Positions 1 through 55,381 of a stretch of 64,000 nucleotides of DNA are shown one piece after another. A model generated the notes under the pieces. It searched no databases, was not told where the DNA came from, and was given only the letters and a program-made list of their open reading frames with translations. The number at the start of each line of letters is the position of its first letter. Within the stretch, counting starts at the first letter, position 1. The position numbers and the translations under genes are program-made. Source of the stretch: Mobula birostris. Taxonomy: Eukaryota. The stretch is taken from positions 139,849,522-139,913,521 of the forward strand of contig NC_092370.1 in assembly GCF_030028105.1 (NCBI RefSeq), given 5' to 3'.

Positions 1-1033
1 ACGGACTGAACTCTACCTTGCTGAGGCCAGATGACATCTCTCAGACACCTCCTCTTACTTACCCCTTGAACACGAGCCGACTAAGGAGCACTAGGCCATT
101 ATCATCCGCACCATCACGGACCTTATTAACTCTGGGAATCTCCCTTCCACTGCCACCAACCTCATTGTTCCCTCACCCTGCAGCTCCCATTTCTACCTCC
201 TACCCAAGATCCACAAACCTGCCTGTCCAGGTTGACCCATTGTTTCTGCTTGTTCCTGTCCCACTTAACTTATATCTGCATACTTTGACTCTGTTTTATC
301 CCCCCTGATTCAGTCCCTTCCTACCTACATCCGTGACACTTCACGTGCTCAGGATCTTTTCAATGACTTCAAGTTCCCTGGCGCCAATCGTCATTTTCAC
401 CATGAACATCCAGCCCCAATACACCTCTGTCTCCCATTAGGAGGGCCTTAAATCTCTCTTCTTCCTTCTAGATAACAGACCTAACCTGTTCCCCTTCGCT
501 ACCACTCTCCTCCATCTGGAAGAACTGGTCCTTACTCTCAATAATTTCTCTTTTTTCTCCTCACACTTTCACCAAACAAAAGATATAGCCGTGGGCACTT
601 ACATGGGTCCCAGCTGTGCCCGCATTTCTGTTGGCTAAGTGGAACGGTCTATATTCCAAGCCTACAGTGGTATCACTCCCCAACTTCTTCTACGCTACAT
701 CGACAACTGCAATAGGGCTACTTCCTGCACCCATGCTGAGCTTGTCGACTTCATTAACTTTGCCTCTGACTTCCACCCTGCCCTCAAATTTATCTGGTCC
801 ATTTCCAAAACCTCACTCCCCTTTCTCGATCTCTCTATCTCTATCACTGGAAGCAGTTTATCTACTGATATCTTTTATAATCACACTGATTCTCACAGCT
901 ACCTGGACTAAACCTCTTCCCACCCTGTCACTGGTAAAGATGCCATCCCCTTCTTTCAGTTCCTCCATATCCATTGAATCTTTCCTTCCTCCACCATCAA
1001 TGCTGACCTCACCCATATCTCTTCTATTTCACG
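1..1033 (+). mobile_element. Penelope-like element, decayed reverse transcriptase fragment
   Basis: Frameshifted RT motifs FYLLPKIHKP..G.PIVS (~190), AVGTYMGPS (~590) and LLLRYIDNC (ORF 639-911). Runs off the window start. Confidence 0.8.
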
Positions 1034-1880
1034 TGTAATTCCCTGGCTAAGATTTCTACTGTTAATGCTGTAGCTTATTTCATTTAGTAGCTTTCTGTAG
1101 AAGCAATGTGTCCTGCTGATAGCATGTTTGGGTTTCGGCTAAAGATAAGGGGCTATGATGTTCAACTTTGGGATTTTGTGTCAGCCAATCAGGGTGGTGG
1201 AACTGAGAGAAGGTTCTAGAGAAAGCTGGATGGAAAGAGATTTGTGATGGACGCTGGTGGGGCTTGTGGTCTTTTTGGCGGGAGCTGCAGAGAGGACAGG
1301 AGGGAAGATAGCTGAGGATGTTGTGGGAAGGAGAGTCCCTATCGCACAAAGTGCTTTGTGCATATGAATGACTCCAAGGAGGAAGGGCCAAAACTCCTGA
1401 GGAAGTGCCCATTTGTTCAAAATGGATGTCGAGTGAAGCTCAGAATGTGGTGTGTGCTTTCACACAGACTGTGGGTCCAAAGCATGAGTAAAAAAGATAA
1501 CTTCAAGGTGAGTTCCAATGATGTGCACATTTAGACTGGTTTAACTGTATGAGCCCTTTTATTTTTTCCCATTTTCTTTTTCCTACTAACTATTCAGTAA
1601 AGCAGAAATTTGTAAATATACTTTCTTTATAATTTTATGTGGTGTACAATGTCATTTCTTGCTGACTGATAATTGTGTATGGGCAGCATTTACACAGTAT
1701 TCGCTGAAATCGAGGGTTCTTTAATTGGAACATCATGACATTCCTGTTTGGTTGAATCTAAATCATATCAACTGTAGTGCCTATTGTTTAAGAAAGGTGG
1801 CCTTCTCACCACTGAGTACCATGGCTGTAAGCGAGGCTAGCAACAAGCCAAGTTTCCATACAAACCCGGTGAGGGACTGT
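1034..1880. mobile_element. LTR-like insertion (possible solo LTR) interrupting the Penelope copy
   Basis: Starts TGTAA with an abrupt composition switch from CT-rich to GA-rich; Penelope sequence resumes at ~1883. The 3' end and TSD were not resolved. Confidence 0.4.
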
Positions 1881-1882
1881 AA

Positions 1883-2320
1883 GCACCCCATCCTCCCTGC
1901 ACTTCACCAGGGATAGGGTTCCTCTTGTCCTCACCTACCACCACAGAAGCCTCTGTATCCAACACATAATTCTATGTAACTTCTGTCATATCCAACGAGA
2001 TCCGACCACTTTCTGCTTCCCGCAGGGATTGCTCCCTATGTGACTCCCTTGTCCATTCGTCCCTCCCCGCTGATCGCCCTCCTGTACTTACCCTTACAAG
2101 TAGAACAAGTGCTACACCTGCCCCCATACCTCCTCAACTGTCATCGACTGTATCCGATGCTCCAGGTGTGGCCTCCGACATACCGGTGAGATATAGATTG
2201 GGAGACTACTTTGCCGAGCACCTATTTATTCCTTTCCATGGATGCTGCCTGACCTGCTGAAATACCTCAGCACTCTGTGGGTGCTGCTTGGATTTCCAGC
2301 ATCTGAAGAATTATTTATGT
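1883..2320 (+). mobile_element. Penelope-like continuation (GIY-YIG remnant and 3' terminus)
   Basis: Similar to the reverse complement of the GIY-YIG region at 53706-54200. Ends in the GATGCTGCCTGACCTGCTGA...CCAGCATCTG terminus seen throughout the window. Confidence 0.7.
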
Positions 2321-2769
2321 TTAATACTTTATCGTTTTGGTCAGAGTCCCTTTATGTGCATAAACACTTGTGCCTAGCTTCACTTTACAGACATGCAATC
2401 AATCCCTACGTATAAACTACCTTATTTATTGTGTTTTTTGATATTATTATGTTTTTTATCTCTTTGTGCTTTATTTTGTGCTGCATCAGGTCCGGAGGAA
2501 CAATTATTTTGTTCTCCTTCACACTTTTGTATTGGAAATGTCATTAAACAATCTTGAATCTCGAATCTGAATCTGAACCCCAGATTCAGAAGCATGTGGC
2601 AAACTAGCTTGAGATTCATTTTCTTGCAGGCATTTATAATAAAGAAATGCAACAGAATTTATTAAAAATTATACATAACAAAGACTGACAAACAACCAAC
2701 ATGGAAAAGAAAAGAAATTGTGCAAGCAAGCAAACAAACAAACAAATAAATAAATTATACTGAGAACAT

Positions 2770-2901: not shown

Positions 2902-4615
2902 TTGTCATACTTTGCGTCAGTATTCACTACAGAGAAGGACCTTGGCGATTGTAGGAATGGCTTAGAGCGGACTGAAAAGCTTGAGCATGCAGATATTAAA
3001 ATAGAGGATGTGCTGGAGCTTTTGGTAAGCATCAAGTTTGATAAGTCACTGGGACCAGACAGGATGTACGCCAGGATACTGTGGGAGGCGAGGGAGGAAA
3101 TTGTTGAGCCTCTGGCAATGATCCTTGCATTATCAATGGGGATGGGAGAAGTTCCGGAGGATTGGGGGGTTGCGCATGTTGTTCCCCTATTCAAGAAAGG
3201 GAGTAGGGATAGCCCAGGAAATTATAGACTAGTGAGTCTTACTTCAGTGAATGGTAATTTGATAGAAAAGATCCTGAGAGGCAGGATTTATGAACATTTA
3301 GAGAGACATAATATGATTAGGAATGCTATGCATGGCTTTGTCAAAGGCAAGTCGTGCCTTACGAGCCTGATTGAATTTTTTGAGGATGTCACTAAACACA
3401 TTGATGAAGGTAGAGTAGTAGATGTAGTGTATATGGATTTTAGCAAGGCATTTGATAGGGTACCCCATGCAAGGCTTATTGAGAAAGTAAGGAGGCATGG
3501 AATCCAAGGGGATATTGTTTTGTGGATCCAGAACTGGCATGCACACAGAAGGCAAAGAATGGTTGCAGATGGGTCATATTCTGCATGGAGGTCGGTGACC
3601 AGTAGTGTGTCTCAGGGACCTGTTCTGGGACCCCTACTCTTCATGATTTTTTATAAATGACCTGGATGAGGAAGTGCAGGGATGGGTTAGTAAATTTGCT
3701 GATGACACAAAGGTTGGTGGTGTTGTGAATAGTGTGGAGGGTTGTCAGAGGTTACAGCAGGACATTGATAGGATGCAAAACTGGGCTGAGAAGTGGCAGC
3801 TGGAGTTCAACCCAGATAAGTGTGTGATGGTTCATTTTGGAGGTCAAATATGATGGCATTAATACCATATTAATGGTAAGACTCTTGGCAGGGTGGATGA
3901 TCAGAGGGTTCTTGCGGTCCGAGTCGATAGGACACTCAAAACTTATGCACAGGTTGACTCTGTGGTTAAGAAAGCATACGGTGCATTGGCCTTCATCAAC
4001 CATGGGATTGAGTTCAAGAGCAGAGAGGTAATGTTACAGCTATACAGGACCCTGGTCAGACCCCACTTGGAGTACTGTGCTCAGTTCTGTTCGCCTCACT
4101 ACAAGAAGGGTGTGGAAACTATAGAAATGGTGCAGAGGAGATTTACAAGGATGTTCTCTGGATTGACAAGCATGCCTTATGAAAATAGGTTGAGTGAACT
4201 TGGCCTTTTCTCCTTGAAGCAACGGAGGATAAGAGGTGACCTGATAAGGGCGTATAAAATGATGATAGGAATTGATCGTGTGGATAGTCAGAGGCCTTTT
4301 CCCAGGACTGAAATGGCTAACACGAGAAGACACAGTTTTAAGGTGCTTAGAAGTAGGTACAGAGGGAATGTCAGGGGTAAGTTTTTTATGCAGAGTGGTG
4401 AGTGTGCGGAATGGGTTGCCAGCAATGGTGGTGGAGGTGGATACAGTACGGTCTTTTAAGAGACTCTTGGATAGGTGCATGGAGATTGGAAAAATAAAGG
4501 GCTATGGGTAACCCGAGGTAATTTCTAAAGTAAGTACATGTTCGGCACAGCATTGCGAGCTGAAGGGCCTGTATTGTGCTGTAGGTTTTCTTTGTTTCTA
4601 AGTTCTATGTTTCTA
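2902..4615 (+). mobile_element. CR1-clade LINE, 5'-truncated, RT plus 3' UTR
   Basis: ORFs 2902-3660 and 3893-4459 contain YMDFSKAFD, QGPVLGPLLF and LVRPHLEYC; FADD at ~3695 follows a frameshift; TTCTATGT-like 8-mer tail at ~4590-4615. Confidence 0.93.
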
Positions 4616-11619: not shown

Positions 11620-11830
11620 TACTACCTGCCAGTTTGTACTCCTTCCTCTCCCCCTCCAGCTTCTTAATCTGGCTTCTTTTCCTCTTCTTTTGCAGTTCTT
11701 CTGAAGGGTTTCAGCACAAAACATCAACTGTTAATTCCGCTACCCAGATGCTGCTTGACCTGCTGAGTTGCTCCAGCATTTTGTGTGTGTTGCTCAGGAT
11801 TTCCAGCATCTGCAGAACCTCTTATGTCTT
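11620..11830 (+). mobile_element. Penelope family-1 terminus (decayed hammerhead)
   Basis: CAGTTCTTCTGAAGGGTTTCAGCACAAAACATCAACTG followed by the shared terminus. Confidence 0.65.
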
Positions 11831-32310: not shown

Positions 32311-32598
32311 CGAATTAACTCTTCTCGAGCTCCCACCCAGGTACCAGCATTGATTTTAACCAACATTTCCAAGGCAAACTCTGCCATCTTCATCAAGGAT
32401 GATGCCTAGAAATGTCTAGTCCGGTGGTATATATACCTCGCCCCCCCCCCCCCCCCATTGCCAGTACCTCCTGATTGGTTAGTCCTCATCCAATCCGGTT
32501 TCCACTATCCCACCTTTTTTACAATCAAATTCCAGTTCTTATTTACCGCAGGACCTATTGTGTCATTATTTTTACCAGTGACAACAATTCTTACATTA
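32311..32598 (-). mobile_element. Penelope family-2 terminal repeat with hammerhead remnant at 32358-32400
   Basis: Minus strand reads ATCC-TTGATGA-A-GATGGCA-GAGTT-TGCCTTG-GAAA-TGTT-GGTT. Confidence 0.7.
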
Positions 32599-35384: not shown

Positions 35385-35462
35385 GGGCGGTGCCATGGCA
35401 CCATGAGTAGAGCCACTGCTTTATGGCTTCAAAAACTTGGCTTCAATCCTGTCTGATGCACA

Positions 35463-35508
<46 letters not shown>

Positions 35509-35990
35509 CACAGACAATTCTGGAGGAACTCAGCAGTTCAGGCAGTAAGTATGGAGAGGAATAAATAGTCAATGTTTCAGGCCAAGACCCGAAAGATTGA
35601 CTGCTTATTCCCAGCATTCGGTGCTGCCTGGCCTGCTGAAATCTTCCAGCATTTTGCGTGCATTACTCTGGACTCCCAGCATCTACAGAAATCTCTAGTG
35701 TTTCTGTCTTCAATCCTGACCATTGGTCTGTGTGAAGTGTGGACACTCTCACTGACAACATGGTTTCCTTCAGGTACCCCAGTTTCTTCCCACATCCTAA
35801 AAATTGGTCGGTGAATTGTCCATGGTAAGTTGCCTCTGGGGTGTGGATGAATGTTGCAACTGAGTTGGCGGGGGAGATAGGTAATGGTTCTGTAAGGAGA
35901 ATAAAGTGGGTTTGGTTTAGGGTTAGTTGGAAATGAGTGTTTGATGACTGATGCAAACTTGATGGTCCGAAGGACATGTTTCCATACTGT
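35385..35990 (+). mobile_element. V-SINE interrupted at its B-box by a fold-back Penelope insert
   Basis: Head ~35385-35451; V-domain resumes after 35718. Confidence 0.6.
35452..35707. mobile_element. Fold-back Penelope family-1 mini-element with 11-bp TSD and (CA)n expansion
   Basis: TSD CTTCAATCCTG at 35441-35451 and 35708-35718; inverted termini around 35575-35595; CA repeat 35459-35512. Confidence 0.75.
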
Positions 35991-36034: not shown

Positions 36035-36072
36035 CAGTCCTGATGAAGGGTCTCAGCCCAAAACATCGACTG
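36035..36072 (+). ncRNA. Minimal type I hammerhead motif in Penelope terminus (GAAA mutated to AAAA)
   Basis: CAGTC-CTGATGA-A-GGGT-CTCA-GCCC-AAAA-CATC-GACTG; stem I CAGTC/GACTG is perfect. Confidence 0.7.
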
Positions 36073-38189: not shown

Positions 38190-40466
38190 CACTGTCTAAA
38201 CTCTCTCCAAAGTTTTGCTGACACATCCAGGTGAGTGCACAGGGAGATAGCGTACTCGACCACTGCTACTCTCGCTTCCGCAACACTTACAAAGTGCTCC
38301 TTCACCTCCCTCCCATTTGGAAAATCAGACCACTCCTCCATTTTTCTGCTGCCAAAGTACAGGCAGAAGCTGAAACATGAGGTGGCCATAGTTAAAACCA
38401 TCCACTGTTGGTCCGACCAATCAGCCCCCTCCATGCTATTGGATTGCTTTGATGATGTCGACTGGAATGTCTTCCATGATGAGGATATCTCCGAGTTCAC
38501 GGATGGGGTCATGAGTTTCATCCAGAAGTGCATCGAGGATGTTGTCCCCCAGAAATTGGTCAGGGTCTACCCAAACCAGAAACCTTGGATCAACAGATCC
38601 ATGCAAGCAGCACTCACTGCGCAACACAGAGTTTACATTGCCGGTAACCAACAAGAAGACAATAAATGCAGCTATGATCTGCGTAGTCATCAAGGCAGGG
38701 AAACAACAACGCAGGGACAAGATCCAGACTCAACTCTCCACGAACAACACATGCAGTTTATGGCAAGGTCTGTACACCATCGCAGACTTCAAAGCTAAAC
38801 ACAGTAGTGTTTCCAACATCGTTGCCCCCTCCCAGATGAACTAAATCTTTTTTACGCTCGATTCAACGTTGCCCACACTGAGCCCCTGAGAAGACCTGAA
38901 GATGATGTGACTGCCAGTTTGGTCATCTCTGAGGCCAAAGTACGCAGGTGCTTCCAACGGGAGGACAGTTGCAAGGCCGTGGGACCAGACGGCAGGCGAG
39001 TACTCAGGATGTGCGCGGCACAACTGACTGGCGTGTTTACTGACATTTTTAATCTCTCCCTCTCCCAGTGTAGAGTGTCCTCCTGCTTCTAAACATCCAC
39101 CACCGTTCAGGTACCTAAAAAGACCAAGGTAACCTGCCTGAACGACTGGCGTCCTGTCGCACTCACCTCAATAATAAGCAAATGCTTTGAGTGACTGGTA
39201 AAGGACTGCATCTGCAGCTTGCTACCACCCACACTGGACCCCCTACAATTCGCCTAGTGACACAACCAATTGACAGATGATGCAATAGCCACAGCTCTAC
39301 ACACCGCCCTTACACATCCAGAGAAGAGGTATGTTTATGTGAGAATACTGTTCTTAGACTACAGTTCAGCATTCAACACCATAATTCCTTCCAGGCTCCA
39401 CAAGAAGTTCAGAAACCTCGGCCTTCACCCTGCCTTACGCAGCTGGATCCTGGACTTCCTGTCAGATCACCGGCAGGTGGTAAGAGTGGGCTCCCTCAAC
39501 TCTTCCCCTCTGACCCTCAACACAGGTGTCCCTCAGGGCTGTGTACCAAGCCCCCTCCTTTACTCTCTGTATACCCATGACTGTATCACCACCCACAGCT
39601 CCAATATGCTAATTAAATTTACTGATGACACTACACTGATTGGTCTAATATCAAATAATAATGGGGCAGATTACAGAGAGGAAGTCATCACCCTGACACA
39701 GTGGTGTCAATAAAACAACCTCTCCCTCAATGTCGCAAAAGCAAAAAACAAATGTCGCAAAGGTTGTGGCTACAGGAGGAATGGAGACAGGCTAGCCCCT
39801 ATTGACATCAATGGATCTGGGGTTGAGAGGGTGAACAGCTTTACATTCCTCGGCATAAACATTACCAAGGATCTCACGTGGGCTGCACATACCGGCTGTG
39901 TGGTGAAAAAGGCACAACAGCGCCTCTTTTACCTCAGACAGTTAAAGAAGTTTGGTGTGGGTCCCCAAATCCTAAGGACTTTCTACAGGGACACAATTGA
40001 GAGCATCCTGACCGGCTGCATCACTGCCTGGTACGGGAACTTTACCTCCCTCAATCACAGGACTCTGCAGAGAGTGGTGCGGACAGCCCAGCGCATCTGT
40101 AGTTGTGAACTTCCCACTATTCAGAACATTTGAAAAGACAGGTGTGTAAAAGGGGCCCGAAGGATCATTGGGGACCCAAGTCACCCCAACCACAAACTGT
40201 TCCAACTGCTACCATCCAGGGAACAGTACCGCAGCATAAAATCCAGGACCAACAGACTCCGGGACAGCTTCTTTCACCAGGGCATCAGACTGATTGATTC
40301 ATGTGGATACAACTATATTTCTATGTAATATTGACTGTCCTGTTGTACATACTATTTATTTATAAATTACTATTAATTGCATATTGCACATTTAGGTGGA
40401 GATGTAACGTAAAGATTTTTACTCCTCTTGTATGTGAAGGATGTAAGTAATAAAGTCAATTCAATT
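38190..40466 (+). mobile_element. Rex1/Babar-like LINE, long copy (endonuclease C-terminus, RT, 3' UTR)
   Basis: FGKSDHSSIFLLPKYRQKLK, FLDYSSAFNTI, TGVPQGCV, KFTDDTTLIGLI and KKAQQRLFYLR; AATAAA plus TCAATTCAATT tail; stops and frameshifts present. Confidence 0.92.
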
Positions 40467-52997: not shown

Positions 52998-53705
52998 TAT
53001 GAGAGTCATGGTTAGAATGGATAGTCATTACCTTTTTCTCAAAGTGGCAAATGCCAAAACCAAAGATAGCAATTTAAGGTGTGCAGTGGAAAGTTTGGGA
53101 AAGATATCAGAGGTGAGAATTATTTTACACAGAGATTGGAGCCTGAAAAGCACTGCCCATGGATGTGGTAGAGGTTGATATCATTGGAATATTTCAAAGA
53201 TTCTTGGAAACACATAGATGTAAGAAAATTGGGAGACTATGGCCTGTGTAGGAGAGAAGGATTAGATTGATTGTGGAACACACACAAAAAATGCTGGTGA
53301 ATGCAGCAGGCCAGGCAGCATCTATAGGAAGAGGTACGGTTGACATTTTGGGCCGAGACCCTTCGTCAGGACTAACTGAAAGAAGAGATAGTAAGAGATT
53401 TGAAAGTGGGAGGAGGAGGGGGAGATCCAAAATGATAGGAGAAAACAGGAGGGGGAGGGATGGAGCTAAGAGCTGGAAAGTTGATTGGCAAAAGGGATAC
53501 GAGGCTGGAGAAGGGAGAGGATCATGGGACGGGAGGCCTCAGGAGAAAGAAAGGGGTAGGGGAGCCCAGAGGATGGGTAAGGAGTTATTGTGAGAGGGAC
53601 AGAGGGAGAAAAGAGAGAGAAAAAAATAATAAATAAATAAACAAACAAACAAACAAACAAATAAATAAATAAATAAGGGATGTGGTAGGAAGGGGAGGTA
53701 GGGCG

Positions 53706-54032
53706 TTAAAAGAAGTTAGAGAAGTCAATGTTCATGCCATCAGGTTGGAGGCTACCCAGACGGAATATAAGGTGTTGTTCTTCCAACCTGAGTGTGGCTT
53801 CATCTTGATAGTAGAGGAGGCCATGGATAGACATAACAGAATGTGAATGGGACAGGGAATTAAAATGTGTGGCCACTGGGAGATCCTGCTTTCTCTGGCG
53901 GACCGAGCGTAGGTGTTCAGTGAAACGATCTCCCAGTCTGCGTCGGGTCTCGCCAATATATAGAAGGCCACAACGAGAGAACCGGACGCAGTATATCACC
54001 CCAGCCGAGTCACAGGTGAAGTGTCGCCTCAC
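53706..54032 (-). pseudogene. GIY-YIG endonuclease domain of a Penelope-like element (open frame, 5'-truncated)
   Basis: GVIYCVRFSRCGLLYIGETRRRLGDRFTEH...VATHFN...LEEQHLIFRLGSLQPDGMN. Confidence 0.92.
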
Positions 54033-54347
54033 CTGGAAAGACTGTCTGGGTCCCTGAATGATGGTAAGGGAGGAAGTGTAAGGGCATGTGTAGTACTTGT
54101 TCTGCTTACAAGGATAAGTGCCAGGAGGGAGATCGGTGGGAAGGGATGGGGGGGTGTGAATGGACAGGGGAGTCGGTAGGGAGCAATCCCTGCGGAAAGC
54201 AGAGAGGGGGAGGGAGGGAAAGATGTGCTTAGTGGTGGGATCCCGTTGAAAGGGGTTCCATCCCTCCCCCTCCTGTCTTCTCCTATCATTTCGGATCTCC
54301 CCCTCCCCCTCCCACTTTCAAATCTCTTACTATCTCTTCTTTCAGTT

Positions 54348-54383
54348 AGTCCTGACGAAGGGTCTCAGCCCGAAATGTCGACT
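54348..54383 (+). ncRNA. Minimal type I hammerhead ribozyme motif (best-preserved copy)
   Basis: AGTC-CTGACGA-A-GGGT-CTCA-GCCC-GAAA-TG-TC-GACT; CUGANGA and GAAA cores intact; predicted cleavage after GUC at 54379. Confidence 0.8.
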
Positions 54384-55381
54384 GTACCTCTTCCTATAGA
54401 TGCTGTCCGGCCTACTGTGTCCATCAGCATTTTTTGTGTCTGTTGCTTGAATTTCCAGCATCTGCAGATTTCCTTGTGTTTGCGAGATTGATTATGGAGT
54501 ATGTTTTTATACTGTAGGCCTGCACGACATCTGTGGTCGAAGGGCACATACTAAGCAATACTGTTCTGTCTTCTTTGTTAATTTGTAATGAATTTGGTCC
54601 ACCATGTCTCCAGCATTTCCTGTATCGACTTTGTAAGTCTCCCCTCTGAAATTCACTGCAGAACTCCAACTCTCTTCTGCATCCCTGCAGTTACCGCTCC
54701 CTTCCTAAGACCTTTCTCAATTCGACTGTTCCTTTAGCTCTTATCTTCCCATCACTCGAGACCAAAAGTCGCCTCCAGGTGAAGCCACAATTCACCAGCA
54801 CTCTTTCCATTCTAGAGCAGTGCAACTGTGCTCATTGTGTGGGATCCTTTACCTTAGAGAAAGTAAGTGTTTAACACCCCTTTCAGTCTGTGAAGATGAC
54901 CTTAAACTTCTATTTTCTCGTCATTTTCATCCATCAACAGTGGCAACTGTGTCATCCAGATTGTTTGGGTCCCTTCCCACTTAAAAATATTCTCTTTGAG
55001 CTCTCTATTCCTCCTTCTCCACAACTTATATATTTGTTCTCTCACATTTCCAATTCTGATTAAAGGCAACTGACCTGTAAGGTGAACTGTTTCTATCTCT
55101 TTGTAAGCTACCTGACCTTCTGAAAATCTTCTGTCCTCTTCTGCTTCACCTACATTGACTTTTGAAGCTGTATTCTGTTTAATTTTTCTTGTGACTTTTC
55201 ATGCTTTTAGCTTACATCTCAGCACCTGAAGATTGCTGCAAAGAATCTTTTTTTAAATTTCTGTCTATTGACATGTTGTTCAGTCCTGTTTAACTCATAG
55301 TTCTGACGGTCAGGGAGTCCTACAAGAAGCACATAGGCCCTTCTGTCTACCAAGTCTATGCTGATTATCAGGTGTCTCCTT

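What the first reader, a model, noticed from the sequence alone, without database searches (positions are those of the whole stretch)
54348..54383. Hammerhead ribozyme motif in a highly repeated Penelope terminus (family 1)
Seen: stem I-CUGANGA-A-stem II-GAAA-NN-UC-stem I' at 54348-54383. Homologues occur at 36035 (+), ~53337-53373 (-) and 19130, with decayed copies near 11692, 20425, 21800, 48130 and 49252. Stem III variants ATGT and ACAT are the two CpG-decay products of palindromic ACGT. Established: Penelope-like elements carry minimal type I hammerheads whose short palindromic stem III is proposed to form in dimers. Inference: the genome holds very many self-cleaving RNA relics, and any young copies could cut host transcripts or process retro-RNAs.
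Basis: partly seen in the sequence, partly recalled or inferred. Interest (0 to 1): 0.85.

Follow-up and report, generated by a model that had tools for sequence, protein, structure and literature searches.

The report
Decayed Penelope retrotransposon hammerhead ribozyme relic
This is a real but ordinary minimal hammerhead ribozyme motif sitting in the short inverted arm of one dead, truncated Penelope-like retrotransposon insertion, a kind of element and ribozyme that has been described since 2014.

Summary
The motif is at 54348-54383 as described. A min-hammerhead descriptor (helix I, CUGANGA, bulge, helix II with G-C first pair, GAAA, 2-nt stem III, UH) finds this one site in the window and none in 300 dinucleotide shuffles.

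It lies in a 1,207-bp Penelope-like insertion (53278-54484) with these parts:
- a 14-nt target-site duplication (13 of 14);
- a long minus-strand arm carrying a GIY-YIG endonuclease C-terminus, untranslated region and a dead hammerhead;
- a 187-nt inverted short arm carrying this motif;
- a 41-nt tail at one end only.

These are published Penelope hallmarks (PMC8557442, PMC11167929, PMC4209133).

A profile search finds 16 arms of the family in 64 kb. Eleven span the whole ribozyme, and only this one keeps every core element. The core CpG sites are decayed.

Contigs of four public runs cover only the insertion, not its flanks, and their majority letters give G12 and C15.2.

Activity of this copy is unlikely. 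It is a lone monomer with an AUGU stem III, and the antisense arm would pair with it. Published min-hammerheads do not cleave as monomers.

The scan already holds 400 notes with "hammerhead" and "Penelope", and the eight listed lie on other DNA of this genome.

The parts
53264..53277 (.). left copy of the 14-nt target-site duplication
   Evidence: Direct repeat D4; 13 of 14 identical to 54485-54498. It abuts the last base of the long arm.
53278..54256 (-). long arm: 5'-truncated Penelope-like element (endonuclease C-terminus, 3' untranslated region, dead hammerhead, short-type 3' end)
   Evidence: Public contigs continue with a consistent family sequence beyond 54248-54250 (agreement 0.75-0.92). 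They end in diverse flanks at 53277.
53709..54257 (-). open frame of 183 codons, remnant of the GIY-YIG endonuclease and its linker; stop codon at 53706-53708
   Evidence: Pfam GIY-YIG E 0.0013, 19.4 bits, below the 22.6 cut-off. 46 homologues at E down to 1.5e-60. 3 of 8 scanned homologues pass the GIY-YIG cut-off. P0001 shows the C-X5-C-X2-C linker and cysteines between GIY and YIG.
53338..53373 (-). dead hammerhead of the long arm (GAAA box reads AAAA, helix I 3' strand broken)
54257..54443 (+). short arm: inverted 5'-truncated copy of the element's last 187 nt
   Evidence: One search reports 188-nt arms (53277-53464 and 54257-54444), 92% complementary. They differ at 15 places: 14 transitions, 8 of them in CpG context. 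I end the arm at 54443, where the tail begins.
54348..54383 (+). the minimal type I hammerhead motif of the finding; predicted cut between 54379 and 54380
   Evidence: the only arm of 11 with all core elements.
54444..54484 (+). 41-nt tail extension, present at this end of the insertion only
   Evidence: Family contigs end in diverse flanks at 54479-54483. The tail is as described in PMC8557442 and PMC11167929.
54485..54498 (.). right copy of the target-site duplication

Best explanation
The motif is the minimal type I hammerhead carried in the 3'-terminal module of a Penelope-like retrotransposon (PLE). By its endonuclease linker the element looks Neptune-type.

Shown: one integration event put a 1,207-bp unit at 53278-54484. 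It has a long 5'-truncated arm on the minus strand, a 187-nt inverted arm on the plus strand, a 41-nt tail at one end, and a 14-nt target-site duplication. The finding's motif is the hammerhead of the short arm.

Inferred from published work: in the active element the ribozyme lies just upstream of the internal sites where the element's reverse transcriptase starts. It is thought to cut multimeric element RNA as a dimer, through its 4-nt self-complementary stem III, or with help from the element's own protein.

Inferred for this copy: it is a neutral relic. It keeps every conserved core base by luck. The other arms lost theirs largely by CpG decay at core dinucleotides C11.1-G12, 15.2-16.2 and C17-G1.1. 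This copy most likely does not cleave to any useful extent.
For: Motif and chance control.

Insertion anatomy. Endonuclease frame and relatives.

Boundaries: depth of public contigs is 0 in four of the five bins at 53100-53207 and 54504-54700. The fifth bin is 0 in three runs and 3.3-3.6 in X20. Depth is very large inside 53262-54503. Loose ends with diverse flanks lie at 53277 and at 54479-54483.

Two further head-to-head inserts in the window share the design: TSD and a tail at one end only. They are 18345-18524 (TSD 14 of 14) and 35452-35707 (11-nt TSD).

The family has 16 arms in the window. Of the 11 arms that span the ribozyme, 4 keep CUGANGA, 2 keep GAAA and 1 keeps everything.

CpG sites in those 11 arms:
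- C11.1-G12: CG 1, CA 5, TG 4, TA 1.
- C17-G1.1: CG 3, CA 5, TG 1, other 1, gap 1.

The window's CpG observed/expected ratio is 0.28.

Literature:
- PMC4209133 (main text read): min-HHRs in PLE terminal repeats, the bulged base, G10.1-C11.1, palindromic 15.2-16.2, dual motifs on opposite strands 100-700 bp apart, no monomer cleavage.
- PMC8557442 (passages): an inverted 5'-truncated copy, and a 30-40 bp tail at one end.
- PMC11167929 (main text read): internal reverse-transcription starts, both strands cleaved and extended, protein-assisted hammerhead.
Against: - No Rfam hammerhead model matches.
- Pfam GIY-YIG on the window's own frame is below the cut-off.
- The reverse transcriptase part could not be confirmed by Pfam. 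Four pieces of the second copy at 95-908 gave no RVT_1 hit, and ORF 616-1035 gave none.
- The one relative with RVT_1 next to GIY-YIG (P0030) may be a chimeric gene model. Its RT part matches other RT relics in the window, not this element.
- Within the window the helices pair in register: 72% of cells, against 20-44% when slid. They show no covariation beyond shuffles: 205 of 500 and 144 of 500 shuffles reach the observed values.
- No cleavage data exist for this sequence. All 24 runs found are contigs and none is on record as RNA.
Confidence: 0.9

Rival explanations
1. The copy is a functional ribozyme today. Transcribed within a host RNA, it cuts after 54379 and so processes or destabilises that transcript.
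For: All conserved core positions, helix I (4 Watson-Crick pairs plus a U-G pair) and helix II are intact. AUGU can still pair with itself through two G-U wobbles.
Against: - Published min-HHRs show no cleavage as single motifs and low cleavage as dimers (PMC4209133). The Anolis PLE hammerhead needs the element's protein (PMC11167929).
- No second sense copy lies in tandem. The nearest plus-strand arm (55057) has lost both boxes.
- A transcript across the whole insertion pairs 35 of the 36 motif bases with the antisense arm in the minimum-energy fold.
- The double-hammerhead fold of two copies scores -10.4 kcal/mol, against -15.8 for two monomers.
- The arms differ at 15 of 188 places, mostly transitions, as for neutral decay.
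Confidence: 0.06
2. The repeat is a non-LTR retrozyme: a small non-autonomous tandem repeat with type I hammerheads that makes circular RNA. It is not the terminus of a Penelope-like element.
For: Retrozymes carry the same kind of hammerhead and are reported to derive from PLE terminal repeats, also in a cartilaginous fish (bioRxiv 10.64898/2026.07.22.740005, abstract and Results part 1 read). Seven arms show no family homology upstream of helix I.
Against: - No tandem array of the family exists in the window. Tandem Repeats Finder gives 4 rows, none of this family.
- The sister arm of this very insertion is continuous with an endonuclease frame.
- The insertion has PLE-type ends: an inverted arm, a one-sided tail and a TSD.
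Confidence: 0.03
3. The hammerhead-like layout is a chance feature of a conserved repeat core whose real role is different, for example a protein-binding or priming hairpin for the element's reverse transcriptase.
For: The hammerhead is not needed for insertion in vitro, and PLE clades without hammerheads proliferate well (PMC11167929, PMC8557442). There is no covariation signal inside the window.
Against: 0 of 300 shuffles give the full descriptor. The layout matches, feature by feature, a ribozyme class found in the PLE sequences surveyed in PMC4209133. Core mutants and a compensatory double mutant behave as expected for a hammerhead in PMC11167929.
Confidence: 0.02

Closest known systems
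Minimal hammerheads (min-HHR) of metazoan Penelope-like elements (Cervera and De la Pena 2014, PMC4209133)
   Same: Shared features:
- CUGANGA and GAAA boxes.
- An unpaired base between positions 9 and 10.1.
- A G10.1-C11.1 pair.
- No helix III hairpin, only a 4-nt self-complementary A-N-N-U.
- A short helix I (4-5 bp).
- Location in the element's terminal repeat.
- Mostly solitary, variable copies, and pairs on opposite strands a few hundred bp apart. Here the pair is 53338-53373 and 54348-54383.
   Different: Helix II here is only 4 pairs with a tetraloop, not the 7-8 pairs described for Schistosoma families. Stem III reads AUGU (two wobbles in a dimer) instead of a strict palindrome. This family's sequence was not found in the searched papers.
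Hammerhead and 3' end of the Anolis Poseidon element PAc (Frangieh et al. 2024, PMC11167929)
   Same: The hammerhead lies a short distance upstream of two alternative 3' ends separated by a tail. Here the ends are 64 and 105 nt after the cut site and the tail is 41 nt. Inverted arms fit cleavage and extension of both target strands.
   Different: In PAc the reverse-transcription starts lie 85-92 nt after the cut (111-118 nt into the frame; cut at 26 nt). Relatives of this element have the C-X5-C-X2-C linker, which Penelope/Poseidon lack (PMC8557442). Whether the frame starts inside the hammerhead here was not testable.
Non-LTR retrozymes of animals (PMC7229834, listing and abstract start only; bioRxiv 10.64898/2026.07.22.740005)
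   Same: A type I hammerhead with a very short helix III, related to PLE terminal repeats.
   Different: No tandem arrays in this window, and the copy is attached to PLE coding sequence.
Rfam Hammerhead families (type I, type III, HH9, HH10, type II; family list recalled, not printed by any search)
   Same: Same catalytic core boxes.
   Different: No match at any threshold tried. The motif has no helix III hairpin.

Membership tests
Hammerhead ribozyme, minimal type I (PLE min-HHR) | Conserved core: C3-U-G-A-N-G-A and G12-A-A-A, then U16.1 and H17 before the cut | tested here: met
   CTGACGA, GAAA, TC at 54352-54379.
Hammerhead ribozyme, minimal type I (PLE min-HHR) | Helix I open (formed by the flanks) and helix II closed by a loop, with a G10.1-C11.1 first pair and one unpaired base before it | tested here: met
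   descriptor hit: bulge 1, stem 4, loop 4. Across 11 arms, pairs are in register in 72% of cells against 20-44% when slid.
Hammerhead ribozyme, minimal type I (PLE min-HHR) | Positions 15.2-16.2 palindromic, so that two copies can build helix III | tested here: inconclusive
   This copy reads TG, giving AUGU: self-pairing only through two G-U wobbles. The family majority in four public runs is C at 15.2. No window copy keeps CG.
Hammerhead ribozyme, minimal type I (PLE min-HHR) | Self-cleavage after position 17 | not testable with these tools
   Only assembled contigs were available, with no raw RNA reads.
Hammerhead ribozyme, minimal type I (PLE min-HHR) | Compensatory changes in the helices among relatives | tested here: not met
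   Within this window's family the covariation score does not exceed shuffles (144 of 500 reach it). These are decaying copies of one source, so the test has little power.
Penelope-like element (endonuclease-positive, C-terminal EN) | [quoted passage not shown] | tested here: met
   - Window frame: Pfam GIY-YIG E 0.0013, below cut-off.
- Relatives P0001, P0014 and P0046 pass the cut-off.
- The alignment shows Y-C-x-x-C-x-x-C...YIGET in P0001. The window copy has lost the middle cysteine.
- Definition taken from PMC8557442 passages.
Penelope-like element (endonuclease-positive, C-terminal EN) | Reverse transcriptase of the PLE type in the same frame, upstream of the endonuclease | tested here: inconclusive
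   - A second decayed copy at about 95-2322 (plus strand) is colinear with relative P0040 across 594-1037 and 1885-2136, and ends in the family's tailed 3' end.
- Its piece 639-908 resembles HTH_animal/RVT_1 clusters in the ESM Atlas (score 0.94-0.95, a lead only).
- Pfam found no RVT_1 in four pieces or in ORF 616-1035.
- RT motifs seen by eye are recalled, not tested.
Penelope-like element (endonuclease-positive, C-terminal EN) | Insertion architecture: 5' truncation, adjacent inverted 5'-truncated copy, 30-40 bp tail at one end only, target-site duplication | tested here: met
   for 53278-54484. The same design is seen at 18345-18524 and 35452-35707.
Neptune clade of PLEs | CX2-5CxxC motif in the linker before the endonuclease | tested here: inconclusive
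   Relative P0001 has C-X5-C-X2-C at the aligned place. The window copy has Y for the middle cysteine. The motif is shared with Nematis (PMC8557442). No phylogeny was made.
Non-LTR retrozyme | Head-to-tail tandem units, each with a hammerhead | tested here: not met
   No such array in the window.

The most novel reading that the evidence does not exclude
The hammerhead region is the preferred 5' end and head-to-head junction of this family's insertions. The genome's very many copies would then record, base by base, one of two things:
- element RNA was self-cleaved in vivo before reverse transcription, giving a spike at the first base after the cut; or
- the ribozyme's own palindromes let the two like-stranded cDNAs made on both target strands anneal, or stall the polymerase. 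The palindromes are the helix II hairpin and the 6-nt palindrome across the cut site.

In this window 12 of 16 arms end at or inside the hammerhead by my criteria. Two of three head-to-head inserts have their junction inside it.
Probability: 0.3. Interest if true: 0.55.

Novelty: new member of a known kind. Interest (0 to 1): 0.2.

Why it matters
As a single locus it matters little. It is one more decayed copy of a ribozyme class already described in PLE sequences from many animal groups and counted in the thousands in several vertebrate genomes.

Two points may be useful beyond annotation:
- In this family several catalytic or structural core positions sit in CpG dinucleotides: C11.1-G12, 15.2-16.2 and C17-G1.1. 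A methylated vertebrate genome therefore inactivates copies quickly and predictably. Counts of 'hammerheads' in such genomes overstate active ribozymes.
- The clean anatomy here makes genomes this dense in copies a good place to ask an open question. The anatomy is a TSD, an inverted arm, a one-sided tail, and ends 64 and 105 nt after the cut. The question is whether PLE hammerheads cut in vivo, and it could be read from the positions of 5' ends.

Tried and rejected
Rfam: no hammerhead hit at gathering score, at E up to 10 on the window, or on 101 bases. I took this as a limit of models that expect a helix III hairpin, not as evidence against the motif.

Core boxes alone: not above chance, so I dropped them as a detector.

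Thermodynamic folding:
- The monomer minimum-energy fold pairs core bases (-10.2 kcal/mol, against -7.9 for the helix I plus II fold; z -1.3 against mononucleotide shuffles).
- The double-hammerhead fold is not favoured.
- Nearest-neighbour energies do not model the hammerhead core, so I use only the result that the antisense arm would sequester the motif.

Covariation within the window: no signal. I did not count it against the ribozyme class.

P0030 as proof of an RT-endonuclease fusion: rejected as possibly chimeric.

Pfam on RT pieces and on ORF 616-1035, and PDB sequence searches: nothing useful.

Search for RNA evidence: 24 runs, all contigs, none on record as RNA. No starts or ends could be seen (table 6: none).

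Upstream homology among arms: only 2 pairs share sequence upstream of helix I. The 5'-end clustering therefore rests on absence of detectable homology in old copies and stays an idea.

The second hammerhead family at 32358-32400 (another finding) was read but not analysed.

Supplementary files of the papers were not opened. The alignments and accession tables of PMC4209133 and the family tables of the 2026 preprint may already hold this family.

Full report
OBSERVATION

The 36 bases at 54348-54383 read, in order: a 4-nt helix I strand, CTGACGA, one unpaired A, a helix II hairpin (three G-C pairs and a U-G pair, 4-nt loop), GAAA, TG, TC, and the helix I partner.

I wrote a descriptor for the published minimal hammerhead. 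It requires helix I of 4 pairs, CUGANGA, 0-1 bulged base, helix II of 4-8 pairs whose first pair is G-C, a loop of 3-8, GAAA, 0-6 nt, U plus a non-G base, and the helix I partner. On both strands of the window it finds this one site and nothing else. 0 of 300 dinucleotide-preserving shuffles give any hit.

A looser pattern gives 1 hit against 0.06 expected. The two boxes alone are not above chance: 12 hits against 7.8 expected.

No Rfam family matches at any threshold. The motif has no helix III hairpin, which those models expect.

THE FAMILY IN THE WINDOW

An iterated nhmmer profile of the segment from the hammerhead to the 3' end finds 16 arms, and none in the reversed window.

Eleven arms span the whole ribozyme region. 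Of these, 4 keep CUGANGA and 2 keep GAAA. Only the arm at 54352 keeps both boxes, the U-H and both helices.

The alignment shows two kinds of 3' end: a short one, and one about 40 nt longer.

The window is CpG-depleted (observed/expected 0.28, G+C 41%). The hammerhead carries CpG at several core places. Counts in the 11 arms:

| site | CG | CA | TG | TA | other | gap |
|---|---|---|---|---|---|---|
| C11.1-G12 | 1 | 5 | 4 | 1 | 0 | 0 |
| 15.2-16.2 | 0 | 3 | 4 | 1 | 3 | 0 |
| C17-G1.1 | 3 | 5 | 1 | 0 | 1 | 1 |

The helices pair in register: 72% of cells, against 20-44% when the partner is slid. There is no covariation beyond shuffles. That fits copies decaying from one structured source.

WHAT THE LOCUS IS

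- The motif lies in the right arm of a 188-nt, 92% inverted repeat: 53277-53464 and 54257-54444.
- Outside the arms there is a 14-nt direct repeat at 53264-53277 and 54485-54498, 13 of 14 identical. It brackets a unit at 53278-54484 (1,207 bp).
- The right arm runs 41 nt further than the left before it meets the repeat. This is the tail, 54444-54484.
- Between the arms, the minus strand holds an open frame of 183 codons that ends at a stop at 53706-53708.
- Pfam gives GIY-YIG at E 0.0013, below the cut-off.
- A database search gives 46 relatives down to E 1.5e-60. The named ones come from a skate and a stingray. Of 8 relatives scanned, 3 pass the GIY-YIG cut-off.
[quoted passage not shown] In each place the window copy has lost one cysteine.
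- According to passages of PMC8557442, the first feature marks PLE endonucleases. The second marks the Neptune and Nematis clades.

The long arm is therefore a 5'-truncated PLE. It holds an endonuclease C-terminus, about 335 nt of untranslated sequence with a microsatellite, a dead hammerhead at 53338-53373, and an end 64 nt after the cut site. The short arm is an inverted copy of the last 187 nt plus the tail.

PMC8557442 describes exactly this. It names strong 5' truncation, an inverted 5'-truncated copy at the 5' end, and a 30-40 bp tail often at one end only. PMC4209133 reports min-hammerheads in PLE terminal repeats, and pairs of motifs on opposite strands 100-700 bp apart.

INDEPENDENT SUPPORT FROM PUBLIC RUNS

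None of the 24 runs found is on record as RNA, and all are kept as contigs.

I laid four of them at 90% likeness on 53100-54700:
- 8,518, 7,740, 55,429 and 81,871 pieces were laid.
- Of the five flank bins, 53100-53207 and 54504-54700, four are 0 or next to 0 in all four runs: at most 3.68 in one run of the four.
- The fifth bin is 0 in three runs and 3.3-3.6 in X20.
- Depth is very large in 53262-54503.
- Loose ends with poorly agreeing (diverse) continuations lie at 53277 and at 54479-54483, which are the two termini.
- At 54248-54250 the continuations agree (0.75-0.92). That is expected where a truncated arm stops but the family goes on.
- Majority letters at two places of the long arm restore G12 (place 53349) and give C at 15.2 (place 53345; 64-90% of depth).

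Both arms of this insertion share the T. So does a young hairpin insert at 18345-18524 (CpG observed/expected 0.81). The T was therefore already in the source RNA.

HOW IT WORKS

Shown here: the anatomy above.

From the literature:
- The Anolis element starts reverse transcription at two internal sites that bracket the tail.
- It cleaves and extends both target strands.
- Its hammerhead cuts only with the element's protein and is not needed for insertion in vitro.
- No RNA-seq reads end at the cut (PMC11167929).
- Schistosoma min-hammerheads do not cut as monomers and cut weakly as dimers (PMC4209133).

Inferred: in active masters of this family the motif processes multimeric element RNA as a dimer or with protein help.

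This copy is a relic:
- It has no sense partner nearby.
- Its stem III would pair only through two wobbles.
- In a transcript across the insertion, 35 of its 36 bases pair with the antisense arm.
- The two arms differ at 15 of 188 places. 14 are transitions and 8 are in CpG context, as for neutral decay.

LIMITS

- The RT part is not confirmed by a curated model.
- A second decayed copy at about 95-2322 is colinear with relative P0040 and ends in the family's tailed 3' end.
- Pfam sees no RVT_1 in its pieces. The Atlas match to HTH_animal/RVT_1 clusters is only a lead.
- P0030, which has RVT_1 next to GIY-YIG, may be a chimeric model.
- No cleavage evidence of any kind exists for this sequence.

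COMPARISON AND NOVELTY

The motif meets the sequence and structure features of the published PLE min-hammerhead. Its helix II is shorter than in the Schistosoma families.

It is not a retrozyme array.

The exact sequence was not found in the searched paper library. Supplements and repeat databases could not be checked.

The scan's own notes hold 400 findings with the words hammerhead and Penelope. The eight listed lie on other DNA of this genome. One unchecked note raises the clustering of 5' ends in the hammerhead.

I rate it a new member of a known kind, of low interest as a locus.

MOST NOVEL READING NOT EXCLUDED

The hammerhead may be the preferred truncation and junction point of these insertions.
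- 12 of 16 arms end at or inside it by my criteria.
- Two of three head-to-head inserts have their junction inside it.

This would turn the genome into a record of either in vivo cleavage or palindrome-guided joining.

Noticed in passing
window 18345-18524: A 180-bp head-to-head pair of family arms with a perfect 14-nt TSD (18331-18344 and 18525-18538), a tail on the left end only, and CpG observed/expected 0.81, so it is a young insert. One arm starts at helix II. The other starts within 2 nt of the predicted cut site. This is already a separate finding of the scan (s1-894773).
   Followed up: partly
window 35452-35707: A second head-to-head pair whose symmetry centre lies in the helix II loop of the hammerhead. 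It has an 11-nt direct repeat at 35441-35451 and 35708-35718, a (CA)n run at the untailed end, and a tail at the other end.
   Followed up: partly
window about 95-2322 (+): A longer decayed copy of the same kind of element. It has RT-like pieces broken by stops and frame changes, an unrelated stretch at about 1040-1880, the endonuclease linker and core with deletions, and then the family's tailed 3' end. Its hammerhead is deleted. The junction lies close to the cut site but cannot be placed to the base.
   Followed up: partly
window 54204-54272: The first 17 nt of the short arm are 94% complementary to 54204-54220 inside the long arm, 35 nt away. This local hairpin drew weak microRNA-model matches in Rfam (E 0.7-9). 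The same C/T-rich word occurs at two places of the element and may have guided the arm junction.
   Followed up: no
window 54420-54484 and other tailed arms: Both alternative 3' ends are preceded by the same short word followed by a T/G-rich run. The two reverse-transcription start sites therefore look like a duplicated signal about 40 nt apart.
   Followed up: no
window 32358-32400 (-): The scan's 'second hammerhead family' was read but not analysed. On the minus strand the first box reads with T at position 3.
   Followed up: no
window 15954-16020: A palindromic 67-nt hairpin matches Rfam mir-9256 on both strands at 29-32 bits, far below the gathering score of 80. It is probably a small inverted-repeat element.
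   Followed up: no
window 3460-3823, 24112-24366, 39438-39746: Other reverse-transcriptase relics, 31-36% identical to the RT part of P0030, not of the Penelope kind.
   Followed up: no
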